From NCBI GenBank assembly GCA_023334545.1, contig JAADVB010000039.1, positions 38,063 to 102,062 on the forward strand: DNA of 64,000 nt, read 5' to 3'. Origin of the DNA: Salisapilia sapeloensis CBS 127946. Lineage: Eukaryota; Protista; Oomycota. Below are positions 1 through 5,156 of the stretch, piece after piece. Under the pieces are notes generated by a model that was not told where the DNA came from, did not search any database, and saw only the letters and a program-made list of their open reading frames with translations. How positions within the stretch are numbered: the stretch's first letter is position 1; each line of letters opens with the position of its first letter. Position numbers and translations under genes: made by a program.

Positions 1-2852
1 GCTAGAGTACCAGCCGCAATAGCAGAGATGAACGCAGCGACGTGGTCTTGTAGCTTTTGGACTGATTCGCTTACCGAAGTTGATTCTGTTGTCGACTTCC
101 CGCTCGTCAAGACACCTTTCGGATAGTCCCAGTCGTTGGCCGCTGGGTTATGCCGAATCGCAGACATCCAGCCAGACTTGAGGTTCGAATCAAACGTCAG
201 CGCGACCTTGCCTTGATTCACATCCGCTGCCAATCCATCTGCATGCAGTTCAGCCGCACGCCAAATGCCTCGCAACGCTTCAATATCGTCTTTTAACGCT
301 TCCACGAACCGTCGAAAGTCACTGTCATTCGTATACACGGCACCATGGCGAGTATATTTTTTCTCCTCATCTTCCAACGCCGTGATGGCACGAGATAAAT
401 CGTCATGAGTCACATAGCGCTTATCAGACACTTCATTCGAGAACCCGAACAACGTCCGAAGGTACTCGAGTTCATCCTTTTCTGATCGAGCTGGCAATTC
501 CTCCTTTCGAGCACGTAACCACTTCCGAACGGTGGACGGAAGATGCTGTAGTCGAATAGCTCCTTGGTGTTCATCGTCATCATGACAACCTGGCGTTCCG
601 AGTTTCTCGGACTTTAGCATTCGGAAAGAAGCTTCCGGAAGTAGTTGATCAGTGCTAGGTGCACCTAACGCAATATGAAAGTGTGCGAATTGAGAGAAAT
701 TAACTAGTCCAGAAGCATCATGGAATAGAAGAGAGAATGCAAGTGCCATGCCACGATCATATGCTACTGGTGATGGCAAATCTACTTTCTCGACATCATT
801 GTCACCTATACTCGCTTGCACTCGTCTCGGTCGAGACAACATCTTTTCCAGATCGTCTCGAGTAATAAACGATTCCTCTGTTTCAGACCGACTTTCTCGA
901 CTCATCTTCCGAAAGAGATTAAACAAAGCAGCGGATCCACTGCGTGTGATCGTCAAGAAACTCGCTCGATCCATGCACCATACTTTAGCATCCTCCAGCG
1001 CCGTCACAGTGGCACCTCGTCGACTATTGTACAGCAACGCAGCTTCTCCAAACGTTGATCCAGACCCAATAACACGATCGACAAACTCTTCCGTTCGGTT
1101 GGGTTTGTGTCTCGTGATTTGACACCGACCGGACTGGATCAAGTAAAAGTAGTCGCCTTGGTCACCCTGTCGCAATACAGTTGATCCTGCTCGTACGTCC
1201 AGTGGAAAGCACTTGCGCACTGCCATCGCCTTGGCTCGTTCACCCAACTCTGCAAACAACGGATGGTCCGATATAGCTTCCAGAAGGAAGCGCTGGTCAT
1301 CTAAAGACTTCTGACTATCAGGATGAGTTGACACGATCTGCCGGAATGTCGGTTTATCTAATCGCCACAGCACTGCGCCTTGCTTACTACGCACAGTGGC
1401 ACGACGAGGCGTGTCGTACATGAGAGCTGACTCTCCTAGTGCAGATTCAGGTCCATTCGTAGCAACCAAGACACTTTGTTGACCTAAATTTGACCCATAG
1501 ACACCCATTGCTCCAAGTGTCGAGCGACGTGTCAGTCGAGTCGAGCGAGATCGAGACAATTTCGAAGCAGATTGATGAGTTTCGGTCTTTTCTTCATTAC
1601 TTTTTGTGTGATGGTAATCGTCATCCATCGTCGATTCATGCAAGTAATGATCATAGTCCACGTATACATCACACTCTCCTTCCTCGACAATGTAAAAGAA
1701 CTCACCTGCTTCTCCCTGATAAAACAACGTTTCTCCTGCAAGCAGTTCTCGTCGACGAAACTGCTTGGCGATGGAAATAAGCTCCGGTTCACTCAACATG
1801 TGGAAGAGCTGGTGTCGACGTAGACAAGCAACGAGCTGCGATAGTTCCTTGCCTTCCTGTGGCTGCCTTGACGTCTTCTCTTCCTCCAACTGACGAAAAC
1901 GATGTTCCATGCTGGTCAAATGCTTTCGTAGCGAGATTTCAGATAAGAAGCTCACATCCTGTTGGAATTTAAGATAGTCATTCACACCTGTTCCATCTCC
2001 TTCCTTATCCGAAAAGTGCTTCGGTAGGTAGGAATTGGAAGAAGGGTATGGTAACAAGAGACCTAGGTATTGATATAACGCTGCAGCCAATTGAGAACAG
2101 AAGACTTTACTGGAAGCACCGGACGGCATCACTTGTCCGTCTCTATCTTTTGGAAACAGCGGATCCATCTCATTCTCAAAGATGGAACGCTCCGTCTGCC
2201 GTAATTGCTCCGTCAGAGCTCGATACTTTTCACCAACACGCTCGCGCTCAGTTTCCAATGCATTACGCTCAAACTGAGGCATGTTACGTCGGTGCTGCAA
2301 GTCCCCATCTAGTCTCACTAGCTCCTTTTTGGCGGCAATAAGCGAATGGAATAACTTCTCTCGACCTTGACGTGTCGGAACGTTGACACCAGCGTTGAAT
2401 AAACGCTGTGGACGGTTTTCGTACGGACTATCGAGCGCCCAGTGGGCAAATTCCCACGCTTTTTCACAAAACTCATCATCTCGAACTGCCTGAAGCTTTC
2501 GTAACGTGACTTCATGAGCTCGAGATCGACGAATGCGCTCGGATAATGGTCGTAGCTTGACACCAGATAGAGCAGCTTCAAGTAAAAACAACTCACCCGA
2601 TTCCGGGTCCCGAATGACAATGCCATTATGGTCAAAACGAGTTCTACCAAACATCTTTGCAGCCACACAGATCGATGCACCATACGGCGACATGGACGAA
2701 CAAGCTCGGTCGAAGAGCACAATGTCTCCCGTATCAGCACCTAGTAATTGCAATACATCTTTCAATTTGGCATCTTCAACCTGTTCCCGAACATCCTTTT
2801 CATTCAATTCCTTTACTTCATCTTCCGCCTTGTCCGTCGTAAGAGATGCCAT
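1..2852 (-). CDS. Multidomain protein, 3'-partial: permuted papain-like amidase (C92/YiiX-like) + 2 cNMP-binding domains + EF-hand-like segment + probable start of a mitochondrial carrier
   Basis: Hand translation gives one open frame from ATG 2852 to the window edge; no stop falls in the window, so the ORF track omits it. Motifs in order: TGDIVLFDR..RFDHNGIV..LLEAALSGVKLRPL..SPYEN..VFCSQLAAALYQYLGLL..SYLPKHF; LFHML..GETLFYQGEAGEFFYIVEEGEC..LGESALMYDTPRRATV; VLRQGDQGDYFYLIQSG..FGEAALLYNSRRGATV; SGLVNFSQFAHFHIAL; DHVAAFISAIAAGTLA at the edge. Confidence 0.85.
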   Translation of the reverse strand, partial: MASLTTDKAEDEVKELNEKDVREQVEDAKLKDVLQLLGADTGDIVLFDRACSSMSPYGASICVAAKMFGRTRFDHNGIVIRDPESGELFLLEAALSGVKLRPLSERIRRSRAHEVTLRKLQAVRDDEFCEKAWEFAHWALDSPYENRPQRLFNAGVNVPTRQGREKLFHSLIAAKKELVRLDGDLQHRRNMPQFERNALETERERVGEKYRALTEQLRQTERSIFENEMDPLFPKDRDGQVMPSGASSKVFCSQLAAALYQYLGLLLPYPSSNSYLPKHFSDKEGDGTGVNDYLKFQQDVSFLSEISLRKHLTSMEHRFRQLEEEKTSRQPQEGKELSQLVACLRRHQLFHMLSEPELISIAKQFRRRELLAGETLFYQGEAGEFFYIVEEGECDVYVDYDHYLHESTMDDDYHHTKSNEEKTETHQSASKLSRSRSTRLTRRSTLGAMGVYGSNLGQQSVLVATNGPESALGESALMYDTPRRATVRSKQGAVLWRLDKPTFRQIVSTHPDSQKSLDDQRFLLEAISDHPLFAELGERAKAMAVRKCFPLDVRAGSTVLRQGDQGDYFYLIQSGRCQITRHKPNRTEEFVDRVIGSGSTFGEAALLYNSRRGATVTALEDAKVWCMDRASFLTITRSGSAALFNLFRKMSRESRSETEESFITRDDLEKMLSRPRRVQASIGDNDVEKVDLPSPVAYDRGMALAFSLLFHDASGLVNFSQFAHFHIALGAPSTDQLLPEASFRMLKSEKLGTPGCHDDDEHQGAIRLQHLPSTVRKWLRARKEELPARSEKDELEYLRTLFGFSNEVSDKRYVTHDDLSRAITALEDEEKKYTRHGAVYTNDSDFRRFVEALKDDIEALRGIWRAAELHADGLAADVNQGKVALTFDSNLKSGWMSAIRHNPAANDWDYPKGVLTSGKSTTESTSVSESVQKLQDHVAAFISAIAAGTL

Positions 2853-2927
2853 CGTCGTCGATATGTCGGTGACAGCTTCGTGACCAGTCTGATCGGAGGT
2901 ACCCTTGTTGTAACAGACAAACACGAC

Positions 2928-3608
2928 ATGTGGACACAAATGCGGACAAGACCGATGTGGTCGATGCGAGCTACGTCTAGGCTGCTTCCACGATCACTAT
3001 CGACGAATACAAACAGACTAAAAGGATTGGCATTAGAAGAGCAAACCGTGGATGTGATGCGATCGATGAAATGTGAGCTTACGCCGACGCAAATATCCCA
3101 AGATGGAGGCATCGATCATCATGTACATGCGTCATGCTTATGAGTGCAATTTTATGTTGTATGTAGCTGATCGTTTGCATGTTTGATGTGGATACCTAGG
3201 GTGTATGGGATTTACCGGATATGCAAGTGGAAGTTGTGACGCAATGCAAGAATGAATCAAGTGCCGTGGGTGTCCAGTCCCTGCGTGAATTCCATGGGTC
3301 TTTGAGTCGTTATTCGACGCATACAGTCGGTCTCTTTGTTTCTGCTTCTGGCTATAGCATATACGCTCGTAGGTAAGTCACCACTCTTCTATAAGCGATG
3401 ACAAGCATGATAATAAAGTAGATTCTGTAGATTTTTCCAGCGCATGGATCAGCCTTGTATACTAAGCACCATCGAAAACGGCCAGTTCACCTCCTTTTTC
3501 CTAAATACCGCAGCTCATAGTCTGCTTCCAAAGCTCACTTGCGCCACTATGTTCAATGACTATGCACATGAACTAGTACTCACGTACGGAGGCGAAATTT
3601 TAGGCTAA
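2928..3608 (+). CDS. Restriction-endonuclease-fold (Mrr-like, RRG7/DUF2034-like) protein, probably mitochondrial; 3 exons
   Basis: Exons 2928-3122, 3200-3372 and 3431-3608 splice in frame: MWTQMRTRPMWSMRATSRLLPRSLS..KGLALEEQ..DGGIDHH|GVWDLPDMQVEVVTQCKNESSAVGVQSLREFHGSL..GLFVSASGYS..R|FFQRM..LNTAAHSLLP..GEILG*. The N-terminus is Arg/Ser-rich with no acidic residues. Confidence 0.75.
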
Positions 3609-3990
3609 GTAAACAGCGTATCGTCAGTAGCAATCTGTGTACCGATTAAAATACACAAGACGCCATTATGTGTGTTTAATAGTCTTATTTAAACATCGCT
3701 ACCTTCCTATTCTATAGTTAAGAATGAGTATAGAATTAACATATTAACTTTATACACGAAACAAAGTTGGATGGAAATCAAGTAGAAATCTGTTTTGGTT
3801 GTATACGATTGTGCCTAACGGTCCTAAGAATACCCACTGCTCTTTATCACAGCCAGTACTGGACAGATATCGAGTATGCGTACTTAGTATACTGCTACGA
3901 TTGGATCAACTTTCTTTGGCAGTGCAGCTATTCATCTCACTATCATCCATCATCAGCGTCCTTTTTAATCCAACTATCTAGAATGAATAC

Positions 3991-5156
3991 TTACGCTCGA
4001 ACGTCAACCACCATGACGCAGATATTGTCCATGCTCCCACGCGTAAAAGCTTCTTCCATCAACTTTCGCGCACCGTCCTTCGGATCGTCATAGCTATTCA
4101 CAATCTGTCCTGCCTCGTCATTCGAAATCATGTCCCACACGCCATCACTTGCCAGTACGATCGATCGCATGTTCGATGTAATACTCGTCTCTTTCACTTC
4201 CGGTTCCCCGGTAACGAACTGCTTGAGCATACGATCTCCAATGGCACGAGAGACAGCCAAAATGCCTTCGACACGCCAGACACCCCAGAAAACGACAGAC
4301 CCACCGAGCTGCTGCACTCGGTCGCGCTCATCTTTTCGATTCGGCTTGTGGTCGTCTGTCAATGCAATGATCGAGTCGTCATGATTCACGATAATCGCTC
4401 TCGAATCACCCACATGCGCGACGTAGATCTTTTCTCCACGCGTCAAGACCGCCACAGCGGTCGTTCCGTCCTCTGAATTTCTCCGATTGGCGATTTCGAG
4501 GTACTGTTGTATGCATGATAAGTTGTGTATGGAAAGAGAGAGGTATAGACATATACTTCTTTATCCGTCTTGACAAATCCTTCCTTTAAAGCTTTCTTCG
4601 GATCTTTTCGTATCGACTTGTGCTGGATGACGTTCTGGCATAAAGCTTCGACGCAGTAGCTACATACCACGTTAGCACCTATTGCTTCGAATATGGGATC
4701 AATAAACAGTACTTGGCTGCTCCATCACCTCCGTGGCCATCAAAGAGGCCATAGAATGACTGTGTCGAGTCGCCATTCAGCTCTCCGACAGCTACATGCC
4801 GATCCTCCATATACGGCCTCCTTCCCTATCGTAAAAGTTAGTCATGCACTTTTGTATCAGGCAACAGGATTTGTATACCTGCAATTGTGCAACTGCGTAG
4901 CGATATTGCACATTGTCCACTACAGGCGGCAGGATCGGTAGCTCAAATGGTGATGCCCCAGAGCTACTAGCAAAACACGATTAGTTCATATCTACATTCT
5001 ATCGTGCAAATAGACTTTAAATGCAGACCCGAGTGCTGCCACGACGTATCGGAAGATACTAAAGATGGCAAGAATGGCCAACGCGTGGCTTACGTAGCTA
5101 TCACGTAGCATGCTCGCTAAGTTCTGGAGCGTATCGAGACTTATGGGGCCTGCCAT
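3991..5156 (-). CDS. Protein phosphatase 2C (PPM family), multi-exon
   Basis: Q|GRRPYMEDRH, FYGLFDGHGG, DGTTAV, VAHVGDSRA, DHKPNRKDERDR, GILAVSRAIGD, LASDGVWD, GSMDNI across exons. The start at 5156 is less certain. Confidence 0.93.

What the first reader, a model, noticed from the sequence alone, without database searches (positions are those of the whole stretch)
1..2852. Papain-fold enzyme + tandem cNMP sensors + EF-hand-like segment + probable mitochondrial carrier in one polypeptide
Seen: a single open frame of 950 codons with His-before-Cys catalytic motifs (DHNG, His codon 2628-2630; FCSQ, Cys codon 2097-2099), two cNMP domains that keep the Glu and Arg of the phosphate-binding cassette, GLVNFSQF..F....L resembling the Aralar/citrin EF-hand region, and a hydrophobic helix starting at the edge. 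Established: His-then-Cys order defines permuted NlpC/P60 (C92/YiiX) amidases and acyltransferases; Aralar-type carriers have an N-terminal Ca-sensing domain in the intermembrane space. Inference: a cyclic-nucleotide-regulated metabolite carrier with its own thiol enzyme, i.e. a self-contained signalling-to-mitochondrial-transport module. I know of no characterised protein with this architecture. The carrier call rests on only about 15 residues.
Basis: partly seen in the sequence, partly recalled or inferred. Interest (0 to 1): 0.85.

Follow-up and report, generated by a model that had tools for sequence, protein, structure and literature searches.

The report
Cyclic-nucleotide-sensing mitochondrial carrier with fused enzyme
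The window holds the first 950 residues of a real, expressed, single-exon gene that joins a thiol enzyme, two cyclic-nucleotide sensors and a worn-out calcium-sensor domain to a mitochondrial-type transporter; the family is conserved in oomycetes, red algae and some green algae, and I found no paper that studies it.

Summary
Window 2852..1 (minus strand) is one open frame of 950 codons. It encodes four modules:
- A YiiX/YaeF-type (Peptidase_C92) permuted papain-fold domain with invariant His75, Glu92, Tyr144 and Cys252. The predicted fold matches 2if6 and 3kw0 at Z 14.
- Two PKA-R/PKG-like cNMP-binding domains with intact phosphate-binding cassettes.
- A four-EF-hand-fold domain.
- The start of carrier helix H1 at the window edge.

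About 49 oomycete orthologues continue from that exact point into three Mito_carr repeats with Px[DE]xx[KR]. An RNA contig of 3845 nt is colinear with window 1..2870 and runs 975 nt past the edge, so this is one intronless mRNA.

The EF-like region is homologous to the Aralar/MICU-type EF-hand domain. The link runs through red-algal homologues: hhalign E 1e-11, then Aralar1 E 2.9e-10. Its calcium loops are degenerate in all oomycete members.

The same architecture occurs in red algae and early streptophyte algae, so it is ancient and not specific to this genome. I found no paper describing it.

It is best read as a cNMP-regulated relative of the Ca-regulated carriers (AGC/APC) carrying a lipid/acyl-type thiol enzyme. 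The architecture is shown; the regulation and the enzyme's substrate are inferred. The same stretch was also noted in another window of this scan.

The parts
1..2852 (-). Coding sequence for residues 1-950 of a protein of about 1263 aa. It is intronless, and the ATG is at 2852-2850. The gene runs off the left edge of the window.
   Evidence: Open frame. First ATG after an upstream stop. RNA contig of 3845 nt colinear with 1..2870, with no mismatch and no joint. Orthologues of 1040-1320 aa.
1923..2741 (-). Peptidase_C92 (YaeF/YiiX) permuted papain-fold domain, aa 38-310. Catalytic residues: His75 (2628-2630), Glu92 (2577-2579), Tyr144 (2421-2423), Cys252 (2097-2099).
   Evidence: Pfam 28.2 bits as an isolated piece (cut-off 27), and 45 of 45 family members hit. 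Foldseek top hits 2if6/3kw0 at E 4e-5. VIA Z 14.1 and 13.9 over 150-162 residues. The four residues are invariant in 45 and in 18 wide-set sequences. They match the roles described for BcPPNE and YiiX (PMC3142127).
2178..2411 (-). Helical hairpin (coiled-coil-like) of about 75 aa, inserted between the catalytic Tyr and Cys of the C92 domain (aa 148-225).
   Evidence: Model helices H159-187 and H193-219 at pLDDT 85-97. This stretch matches only coiled coils in VIA. The Tyr-to-Cys distance is 91-127 aa in all homologues, against 13-27 aa in YiiX and BcPPNE.
1317..1835 (-). cNMP-binding domain A (aa about 340-512). The phosphate-binding cassette is GESALMYDTPRRAT (E474, R483).
   Evidence: Pfam cNMP_binding. 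PKA-R and PKG alignments. Cassette conservation.
1479..1655 (-). Insertion of about 55 aa in domain A, carrying a basic Ser/Thr motif (RRSTL, aa 442-446, nt 1515-1529).
   Evidence: The alignment shows [RK]-R-K-T-[IL] conserved in most orthologues. No counterpart appears in the PKA-R/PKG alignments, which resume at aa 463.
918..1295 (-). cNMP-binding domain B (aa about 520-645). The cassette is FGEAALLYNSRRGAT (E603, R612). This is the cassette conserved across the whole family.
   Evidence: Pfam best stretch 553-636. PDB matches to PKG and PKA-R at E 1e-35. Gly and Arg are invariant and the Glu is kept (Asp in two) in the 18-sequence wide set.
348..932 (-). Four-EF-hand-fold domain of Aralar/MICU type with degenerate Ca loops (aa 641-835). 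Loops lie at about 651-664, 710-718 (GLVNFSQF), 752-767 and 802-815.
   Evidence: Model pLDDT 81 with four helix-loop-helix units. Foldseek top hits are Aralar 4p5x and citrin 4p5w, followed by many EF-hand proteins. VIA Z 8-10 to calcineurin B, GCAP3, SOS3 and CHP1. hhalign to the linkers of distant homologues: prob 97.4, E 1e-11. The Galdieria linker matches Aralar1 at E 2.9e-10. No PS00018 loop is present.
150..320 (-). Two long helices after the EF domain (aa 845-901). The first is amphipathic and carries Trp864, invariant in the oomycete family. It is a candidate locking-pin helix.
   Evidence: Model helices H205-231 and H240-261. W224 of alignment A2 is invariant in 49 sequences. The analogy to the APC amphipathic helix is inference (PMC6283063).
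3..74 (-). Start of carrier transmembrane helix H1 (aa 927-950), cut by the window edge about 8 residues before the first Px[DE]xx[KR] signature.
   Evidence: Alignment with orthologues. Helix H287-309 in the model.

Best explanation
The gene encodes a regulated member of the mitochondrial carrier family with a regulatory module of about 930 residues ahead of the six-helix carrier. By the conserved carrier topology, this module should face the intermembrane space, which is open to cytosolic small molecules. Aralar/citrin and the ATP-Mg/Pi carrier are arranged the same way.

The module descends from an Aralar/MICU-type EF-hand regulatory domain. A tandem PKA-R/PKG-like cNMP sensor and a YiiX-type thiol acyl-hydrolase/transferase were added to it in a common ancestor shared with red and streptophyte algae. 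In the oomycete lineage, this gene included, the calcium loops have decayed and both cNMP cassettes are intact.

Proposed mechanism: cAMP or cGMP binds the cNMP domains, with domain B as the conserved sensor. Binding rearranges the module. The pseudo-EF-hand domain and the following amphipathic helix with its invariant Trp then release or block the carrier, in the manner of the APC locking pin. The carrier itself is of nucleotide type. The C92 domain keeps its full catalytic set and probably works on a fatty-acyl or lipid-linked substrate at the membrane surface, possibly under the same cNMP control.

Shown: the domain architecture, residue conservation, homology links, a single intronless transcript and the phyletic spread. 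Inferred: location, topology, ligand, direction of regulation, transported substrate and enzyme substrate.
For: - Open frame and domains.
- Orthologues with Peptidase_C92 + cNMP_binding + three Mito_carr repeats.
- The window protein ends in carrier helix H1, and orthologues go on with PLERLK, PLDVVR and PFDLLR.
- One RNA contig of 3845 nt is colinear with window 1..2870 and extends 975 nt beyond. The neighbouring genes assemble as separate spliced contigs.
- C92 fold and catalytic residues. Roles of the residues and the fatty acid bound in YiiX: PMC3142127.
- Phosphate-binding cassettes.
- EF-hand fold. Homology chain from the window family to red-algal homologues (hhalign E 1e-11) and from those to Aralar1 (E 2.9e-10).
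- Canonical EF loops exist in distant homologues at the aligned position.
- Nucleotide-type carrier. The best solved relative is bovine AAC1 at E 3.6e-26, with G-V aligned to AAC1 G-I on H4. JGI labels homologues SLC25A23/24/25/41.
- Locking-pin precedent: PMC6283063.
Against: - The carrier domain of this particular gene lies outside the window and was not read here.
- No experiment on any family member was found.
- The window's own linker has no sequence hit in the PDB, and the structural Z-scores for this helical domain (8-10) are in a range the tool calls common.
- In most non-oomycete homologues the Glu of cassette A is lost, so tandem cNMP binding is not a family-wide feature.
- Nothing here shows that cNMP binding is coupled to transport.
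- Mitochondrial location is assumed from family membership. Some carrier-family proteins sit in peroxisomes or plastids.
Confidence: 0.6

Rival explanations
1. The N-terminal module is mainly a scaffold or docking platform, not an allosteric gate. The tandem PKA-R-like domains, together with the conserved RRxT/RKT motif in the domain A insert, would bind or be phosphorylated by a PKA/PKG-type kinase. This would anchor cNMP signalling at the mitochondrial surface in the manner of an AKAP or R subunit, while the carrier works constitutively.
For: The closest solved relatives of the cNMP tandem are PKA regulatory subunits and PKG. A basic [RK]-R-K-T-[IL] motif is conserved in the insert. The EF loops are degenerate, as in the static EF4-8 dimerisation part of Aralar (established knowledge; PMC4250520 was listed but not read).
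Against: In true R subunits the inhibitor site lies N-terminal to domain A, not inside it. The motif is absent from the distant homologues, which lack the insert. Covalent fusion to a carrier, conserved from oomycetes to red algae, argues for direct control of the carrier.
Confidence: 0.15
2. The protein is primarily a membrane-anchored, cNMP-regulated thiol lipid hydrolase or acyltransferase. The carrier domain would serve as a membrane anchor or substrate-delivery device rather than as an independent metabolite transporter.
For: The four C92 catalytic residues are invariant across the whole family. cNMP domains commonly sit next to the catalytic domain they control: patatin-type lipases with cNMP domains appear among the weak hits (P0051 and P0052). 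Relatives of YiiX handle fatty-acyl substrates.
Against: Orthologue carrier domains keep the three Px[DE]xx[KR] motifs, the [FY][DE]xx[KR] motifs on H4 and H6, and the conserved Gly at the H4 contact point. This is expected of a working transporter. A homologue with the cNMP, EF and carrier parts but no C92 domain exists (P0149).
Confidence: 0.12
3. The protein is not in the mitochondrial inner membrane but in another organelle membrane, such as a peroxisome or endomembrane. The module would then face the cytosol directly.
For: Carrier-family members outside mitochondria are known (established knowledge). A module of 930 aa is much larger than the intermembrane-space domains of Aralar or APC. 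No localisation data were found.
Against: The nearest relatives with known location (AAC, APC, Aralar) are all inner-membrane proteins. Their EF-hand modules are intermembrane-space domains.
Confidence: 0.1
4. The long frame is an artefact: two adjacent genes (a regulatory protein and a carrier) read as one, or a pseudogene.
For: In several Logan assemblies the gene caller split the homologue into an N-terminal protein of about 1000 aa and a carrier of about 270-295 aa on the same contig (for example P0001 with P0053).
Against: There is no stop in 950 codons. A single RNA contig runs across all in-window domains and 975 nt beyond. More than 30 independent NCBI gene models are one protein. The cluster of one split Logan piece (P0003) also holds a full 1265-aa NCBI protein. 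Catalytic and ligand residues are conserved.
Confidence: 0.02

Closest known systems
Ca2+-regulated aspartate/glutamate carriers Aralar/citrin (SLC25A12/13; N-terminal domain structures 4p5x, 4p5w)
   Same: An N-terminal EF-hand regulatory domain is fused in front of a carrier domain. The EF region is homologous. Red-algal family members match the Aralar1 N-terminal domain at E 2.9e-10 over EF1-3. The window's GLVNFSQFAHFHIALGAPS...EASFRML aligns to Aralar GLISYQEFLAFESVLCAPD...VAFQLF through them. Aralar and citrin are the top Foldseek hits of the window's model.
   Different: Four EF-hand units are modelled here, not eight. No canonical Ca loop is present in this protein. The carrier domain is of nucleotide type, with G-V rather than R-[DE] at the H4 contact point in orthologues (the rule comes from established knowledge). 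The additional C92 and tandem cNMP domains are absent from Aralar.
ATP-Mg/Pi carriers APC/SCaMC (SLC25A23/24/25; yeast Sal1)
   Same: Both have a four-EF-hand regulatory domain, a linker helix and an AAC-like carrier. JGI labels family members as SLC25A23/24/25/41. The nearest free-standing carriers, at about 32% identity, include that type. The locking-pin mechanism is a plausible template.
   Different: The EF region is closer in sequence to Aralar and MICU than to SCaMC-1 (E 2.9e-10 against 6e-4). The Ca loops are degenerate. The cNMP sensors and the thiol enzyme are added. The carrier shares only about 30-33% identity with that type, so it is not an orthologue.
[quoted passage not shown]
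   Same: The fold matches (Z 14, rmsd 2.7-2.9 A over 150-162 residues) and so does the profile. The permuted order His-Glu-Tyr-Cys is kept, with all four residues invariant.
   Different: A helical hairpin of about 75 aa is inserted between Tyr and Cys. The protein is eukaryotic and the domain is fused to signalling and transport domains. The substrate is unknown. YiiX itself is only known to bind a fatty acid.
Tandem cNMP-binding domains of PKA regulatory subunits and PKG
   Same: The best solved matches are Plasmodium PKG at E 2.6e-36 and yeast PKA-R at E 1.2e-35. Both domains align in tandem and keep the G-E...R-x-A-T cassettes.
   Different: There is no kinase domain, no dimerisation/docking domain and no N-terminal inhibitor site. 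Domain A carries an insertion of about 55 aa. The residue after the cassette Arg is Arg in domain A and Gly in domain B, not the Ala of PKA or the Thr of PKG, so ligand preference cannot be read off.

Membership tests
Peptidase_C92 (YaeF/YiiX permuted NlpC/P60) | Profile match at or above the Pfam gathering score | tested here: met
   28.2 bits against a cut-off of 27 for the isolated N-terminal 335 aa, and 24.7 bits in the context of the 950 aa. All 45 family N-termini match, best E 1.5e-11. The window sequence alone is borderline; the family as a whole is solid.
Peptidase_C92 (YaeF/YiiX permuted NlpC/P60) | Papain-like core with circular permutation (His and polar residue before Cys) | tested here: met
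   His75 and Glu92 precede Cys252. The model aligns to 2if6 and 3kw0 over nearly the whole chains, Z 14.1 and 13.9, far above the next hit at 8.0.
Peptidase_C92 (YaeF/YiiX permuted NlpC/P60) | Catalytic Cys/His/acidic triad plus conserved Tyr | tested here: met
   H75, E92, Y144 and C252 are invariant in 45 oomycete-clade and 18 wide-set sequences. The roles follow PMC3142127. The geometry in the model could not be measured with these tools.
Peptidase_C92 (YaeF/YiiX permuted NlpC/P60) | Thiol-dependent hydrolase or transferase activity | not testable with these tools
   Needs recombinant protein.
cNMP-binding domain (PF00027), PKA-R/PKG type tandem | Profile match and phosphate-binding cassette with Glu and Arg | tested here: met
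   E 2.1e-37 and 127 bits. E474/R483 and E603/R612 are present.
cNMP-binding domain (PF00027), PKA-R/PKG type tandem | Binds cAMP or cGMP | not testable with these tools
   Inferred from the intact cassettes only.
Mitochondrial carrier family (SLC25, PF00153) | Three tandem repeats of about 100 aa with Px[DE]xx[KR] | tested here: inconclusive
   Only the first helix is inside the window. Orthologues have three repeats, with PLERLK, PLDVVR and PFDLLR. The RNA contig extends 975 nt beyond the edge, which is enough for about 313 aa plus a short UTR. The sequence itself was not readable here.
Ca2+-regulated carriers (AGC Aralar/citrin, APC/SCaMC) | EF-hand regulatory domain N-terminal to the carrier domain | tested here: met
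   Fold. hhalign E 1e-11 to homologues with Pfam-significant EF hands. Those homologues match the Aralar1 N-terminal domain at E 2.9e-10.
Ca2+-regulated carriers (AGC Aralar/citrin, APC/SCaMC) | At least one canonical Ca2+-binding EF loop | tested here: not met
   No PS00018 match in the window protein or in any of 49 orthologues. Pfam EF-hand models give only faint hits. At the loop-3 position the window has DDEHQGAIRLQH, with His where the bidentate Glu should be. The gene should therefore not be filed as a Ca-regulated carrier.
Aspartate/glutamate carrier (AGC) subfamily | Amino-acid-type substrate contact point (R-[DE]) on H4 of the carrier domain | tested here: not met
   Orthologues have G-[VAS] aligned to G-I of bovine AAC1. 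The rule is from established knowledge (Robinson and Kunji 2006), recalled and not checked here.

The most novel reading that the evidence does not exclude
This is the first cyclic-nucleotide-gated member of the SLC25 carrier family. An ancestral module sensing both Ca2+ and cNMP (still seen in red algae) lost Ca2+ sensing in oomycetes, so cAMP or cGMP alone now opens a nucleotide-type carrier. The fused YiiX-type thiol enzyme processes an acyl-linked substrate at the carrier mouth, coupling second-messenger signalling, lipid or acyl chemistry and mitochondrial transport in one polypeptide.
Probability: 0.35. Interest if true: 0.8.

Novelty: new variant of a known kind. Interest (0 to 1): 0.62.

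Why it matters
The only mitochondrial carriers known to carry their own regulatory domains are the Ca2+-regulated AGC and APC types. The two SLC25 reviews that came up in the literature search showed zero occurrences of "cyclic nucleotide-binding". A carrier family with intact cNMP cassettes and a conserved thiol enzyme would be a second regulatory principle for SLC25 transport. It would also be a direct route from cAMP/cGMP signalling to mitochondrial metabolite supply.

The family is conserved across oomycetes, including major plant and animal pathogens, and across red algae and early streptophytes. It was not seen in animals, fungi or land plants among the hits examined here, so it is also a lineage-restricted piece of mitochondrial physiology.

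It gives the poorly understood YaeF/YiiX enzyme family a defined eukaryotic context for finding its substrate. The red-algal members, with a canonical EF loop, and the oomycete members, without one, form a natural pair for asking how a Ca sensor is converted into a structural relay.

Tried and rejected
- **Recovering the missing left part of the gene.** An exact-protein look-up of a neighbouring ORF found nothing, and the homology search gave no self hit, so the genome is not in those collections. The read-laying output does not print the contig sequence beyond the window.
- **Sequence searches of the PDB.** The N-terminal profile A1, the linker profile A2 and the window linker alone returned nothing meaningful. 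The links had to be made by fold and through distant homologues.
- **HMM of the oomycete linker against distant homologues.** Scores were insignificant. Only the profile-profile comparison detected the relation.
- **A working Ca sensor.** Rejected on the absence of canonical loops.
- **An Aralar-type (amino-acid) carrier.** Rejected on the nucleotide-type features of the orthologue carriers.
- **An oomycete-specific invention.** Rejected after the representative search found the same architecture in red and streptophyte algae.
- **The CENP-Q, DUF4878, 7tm_6 and EcoEI_R_C Pfam hits**. These are below their cut-offs and fall on coiled-coil or helical stretches, so I treated them as noise.
- **Literature.** Six of the seven literature searches found no description of the fusion; the seventh supplied the YiiX references.
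- **Phylogeny.** I did not build a tree of the family, so its origin (vertical descent or transfer from a red alga) is left open.
Full report
**Observation**

The reverse strand of window 1-2852 is one open frame of 950 codons. The ATG at 2852-2850 is the first ATG after an in-frame stop 50 codons upstream. The frame runs off the left edge of the window.

**One gene, one transcript**

Four RNA runs of one organism hold the stretch. In run X1 a contig of 3845 nt lies on window 1..2870 with no mismatch, gap or joint, and continues 975 nt beyond the edge. The two neighbouring genes assemble as separate contigs with GT..AG introns of 53-77 nt removed, so these libraries are RNA and contig ends follow transcript ends.

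The figures add up: 2852 nt of in-window coding sequence, about 940 nt more, and UTRs of about 18 and 35 nt match a coding sequence of about 3792 nt. That is the length another reader of this scan noted for the whole gene in an overlapping window (an unchecked lead, consistent with the contig length). The missing part could not be read here because the genome is not in the protein collections.

**Orthologues**

About 49 proteins from Phytophthora, Pythium, Globisporangium, Lagenidium, the downy mildews, Albugo, Saprolegnia, Achlya and Aphanomyces match at 39-53% identity and E down to 1e-289.
- Full-length models are 1040-1320 aa and carry Peptidase_C92, cNMP_binding and three Mito_carr repeats.
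- The window protein ends ...HVAAFISAIAAGTL, exactly where orthologues continue ...ARTVCAPLERLK. The edge therefore cuts helix H1 about eight residues before the first carrier signature.
- Orthologue carriers keep PLERLK, PLDVVR and PFDLLR on the odd helices, and YEFLR and YEKIR on H4 and H6.
- Some Logan assemblies split the gene into two called proteins on one contig. The cluster of one split piece (P0003) also holds a 1265-aa NCBI protein, so the split looks like a gene-calling effect.

**N-terminal enzyme**

All 45 family N-termini match Peptidase_C92, best E 1.5e-11. The window piece scores 28.2 bits against a cut-off of 27.

An AlphaFold model built on 45 sequences has pLDDT 87 and pTM 0.83. 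Its top Foldseek hits are E. coli YiiX (2if6) and the B. cereus enzyme 3kw0 (E 4e-5 to 4e-4). VIA-align gives Z 14.1 and 13.9 over 150-162 residues at 2.7-2.9 A, well clear of the next hit at 8.0.

His75, Glu92, Tyr144 and Cys252 are invariant in the oomycete set and in a wider set that includes red and green algae. They correspond to the His/Glu/Cys triad plus Tyr described for this family, in which YiiX was found with a fatty acid in its hydrophobic pocket (PMC3142127). Related permuted enzymes such as LRAT, PLAAT and LnsA are acyl-transferring.

A helical hairpin of about 75 aa (aa 148-225) is inserted between Tyr and Cys in every homologue.

**cNMP sensors**

Pfam scores cNMP_binding at E 2e-37. 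The best solved relatives are PKG and PKA regulatory subunits at E 1e-35 to 1e-36, aligned as a tandem.
- Domain A has GESALMYDTPRRAT (E474, R483). Domain B has FGEAALLYNSRRGAT (E603, R612).
- Domain B's cassette is conserved throughout the family.
- Domain A's Glu is kept only in the Pythium/Phytophthora-type oomycetes, the group the window's protein most resembles. It is Asp in the saprolegnians and hydrophobic in algae.
- Domain A carries an insert of about 55 aa with a conserved basic Thr motif, RRSTL here.

**EF-hand-like linker**

A model of aa 641-950 (pLDDT 81) shows four helix-loop-helix units with short paired strands, then two long helices, a disordered stretch and H1.
- Foldseek's top three hits are the Aralar and citrin N-terminal domains, followed only by EF-hand proteins.
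- VIA gives Z 8-10 to calcineurin B, GCAP3, SOS3 and CHP1 over about 160 residues. The tool warns that this range is not decisive for helical folds.

The sequence evidence is stronger.
- A whole-library search found more distant proteins with the same architecture. They come from Galdieria, Cyanidium, Rhodosorus, Mesostigma and Chlorokybus, from a transcriptome labelled Papus (a kinetoplastid, so contamination is possible), and from metagenomes.
- Several of these have Pfam-significant EF hands and a canonical loop, such as DRNNNGTIGLDEY, at the position of the window's third loop.
- The oomycete linker profile aligns to the linker profile of these homologues with probability 97.4% and E 1e-11 over 144 columns.
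- The Galdieria linker matches the Aralar1 N-terminal domain at E 2.9e-10, Dictyostelium MICU at 1.6e-8, citrin at 1.5e-4 and SCaMC-1 at 6e-4.

However, neither the window protein nor any of the 49 orthologues has a canonical Ca loop. This is a pseudo-EF-hand domain.

**Carrier type**

Orthologue carrier domains match bovine AAC1 best among solved structures (E 3.6e-26), with G-V opposite AAC1's G-I on H4. The nearest free-standing carriers are only about 32% identical and include SLC25A23/24/25/41-type proteins. JGI uses that label for family members. The carrier is therefore nucleotide-like, is not an Aralar orthologue, and has an unknown substrate.

**Mechanism**

By analogy with AGC and APC, the module should face the intermembrane space, where cytosolic cNMP is available. 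This rests on established knowledge of carrier topology and was not tested here. I propose three steps:
1. cNMP binds, with domain B as the core sensor.
2. Binding is relayed through the pseudo-EF-hand domain and the following amphipathic helix, which carries an invariant Trp864.
3. The carrier is gated as in the APC locking-pin model (PMC6283063).

The C92 enzyme would act on a fatty-acyl or lipid-linked substrate nearby. Only the architecture, the conservation and the transcript are shown; the rest is inference. The rival readings are a kinase-docking scaffold, an enzyme-first reading, a non-mitochondrial location and a gene-model artefact. They are listed with their tests in the Rival explanations section.

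**Novelty**

No paper describing this fusion was found. In the search listing, two SLC25 reviews showed no occurrence of "cyclic nucleotide-binding". The proteins are nevertheless in public databases for many species, under generic names. I rate it a new variant of a known kind: a carrier with a fused regulatory domain. It is ancient and widespread, not specific to this genome.

Noticed in passing
window 2931-3675 (+): A small spliced gene lies head-to-head with the carrier gene. Its exons are about 2934-3122, 3200-3368 and 3427-3654, with GT..AG introns of 77 and 58 nt. Its RNA contigs start at 2931-2934 and the carrier gene's contig ends at 2870, so the two 5' ends are about 60 nt apart with no overlap in the contigs. 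Another reader called it an Mrr/RRG7-like protein with a presequence. I did not test that.
   Followed up: partly
window 3770-4964 (-), continuing beyond 4964: A PP2C protein phosphatase gene (Pfam PP2C E 4.9e-48 on the 3995-4503 exon). It has at least four introns of 53-55 nt. Its RNA word depth is about 5-10 times that of the carrier gene.
   Followed up: partly
window 1515-1529 (-), aa 442-446: The insert in cNMP domain A carries RRSTL. Orthologues show a strongly conserved L-[RQ]-[RK]-R-K-T-[IL]-[AS]-L-P-[ED] at this position. This is a basophilic-kinase (PKA/PKG-type) site or a pseudosubstrate-like motif. It is absent from the red-algal and streptophyte homologues, which lack the insert.
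   Followed up: partly
P0149 and P0124 (representative library): Related architectures exist. P0149 (925 aa) has cNMP domains, canonical EF hands and three Mito_carr repeats but no C92 domain. P0124 (592 aa) shows C92 plus Mito_carr without a cNMP match and may be a partial model.
   Followed up: no
L001 3001-5982 (ENA metagenome scaffold, P0048): The most divergent member with oomycete-like linker motifs (34% identity, NFSQF kept) sits intronless on a 52.9-kb eukaryotic metagenome scaffold of unknown taxon. It lies between a TPR/Aha1_N gene and a WD40 gene.
   Followed up: no
P0127 (EukProt, labelled Papus ankaliazontas): A homologue with the full architecture is filed under a prokinetoplastid. 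The source is a transcriptome of a predatory flagellate, so prey contamination is possible. The phyletic range outside oomycetes and Archaeplastida is therefore uncertain.
   Followed up: no
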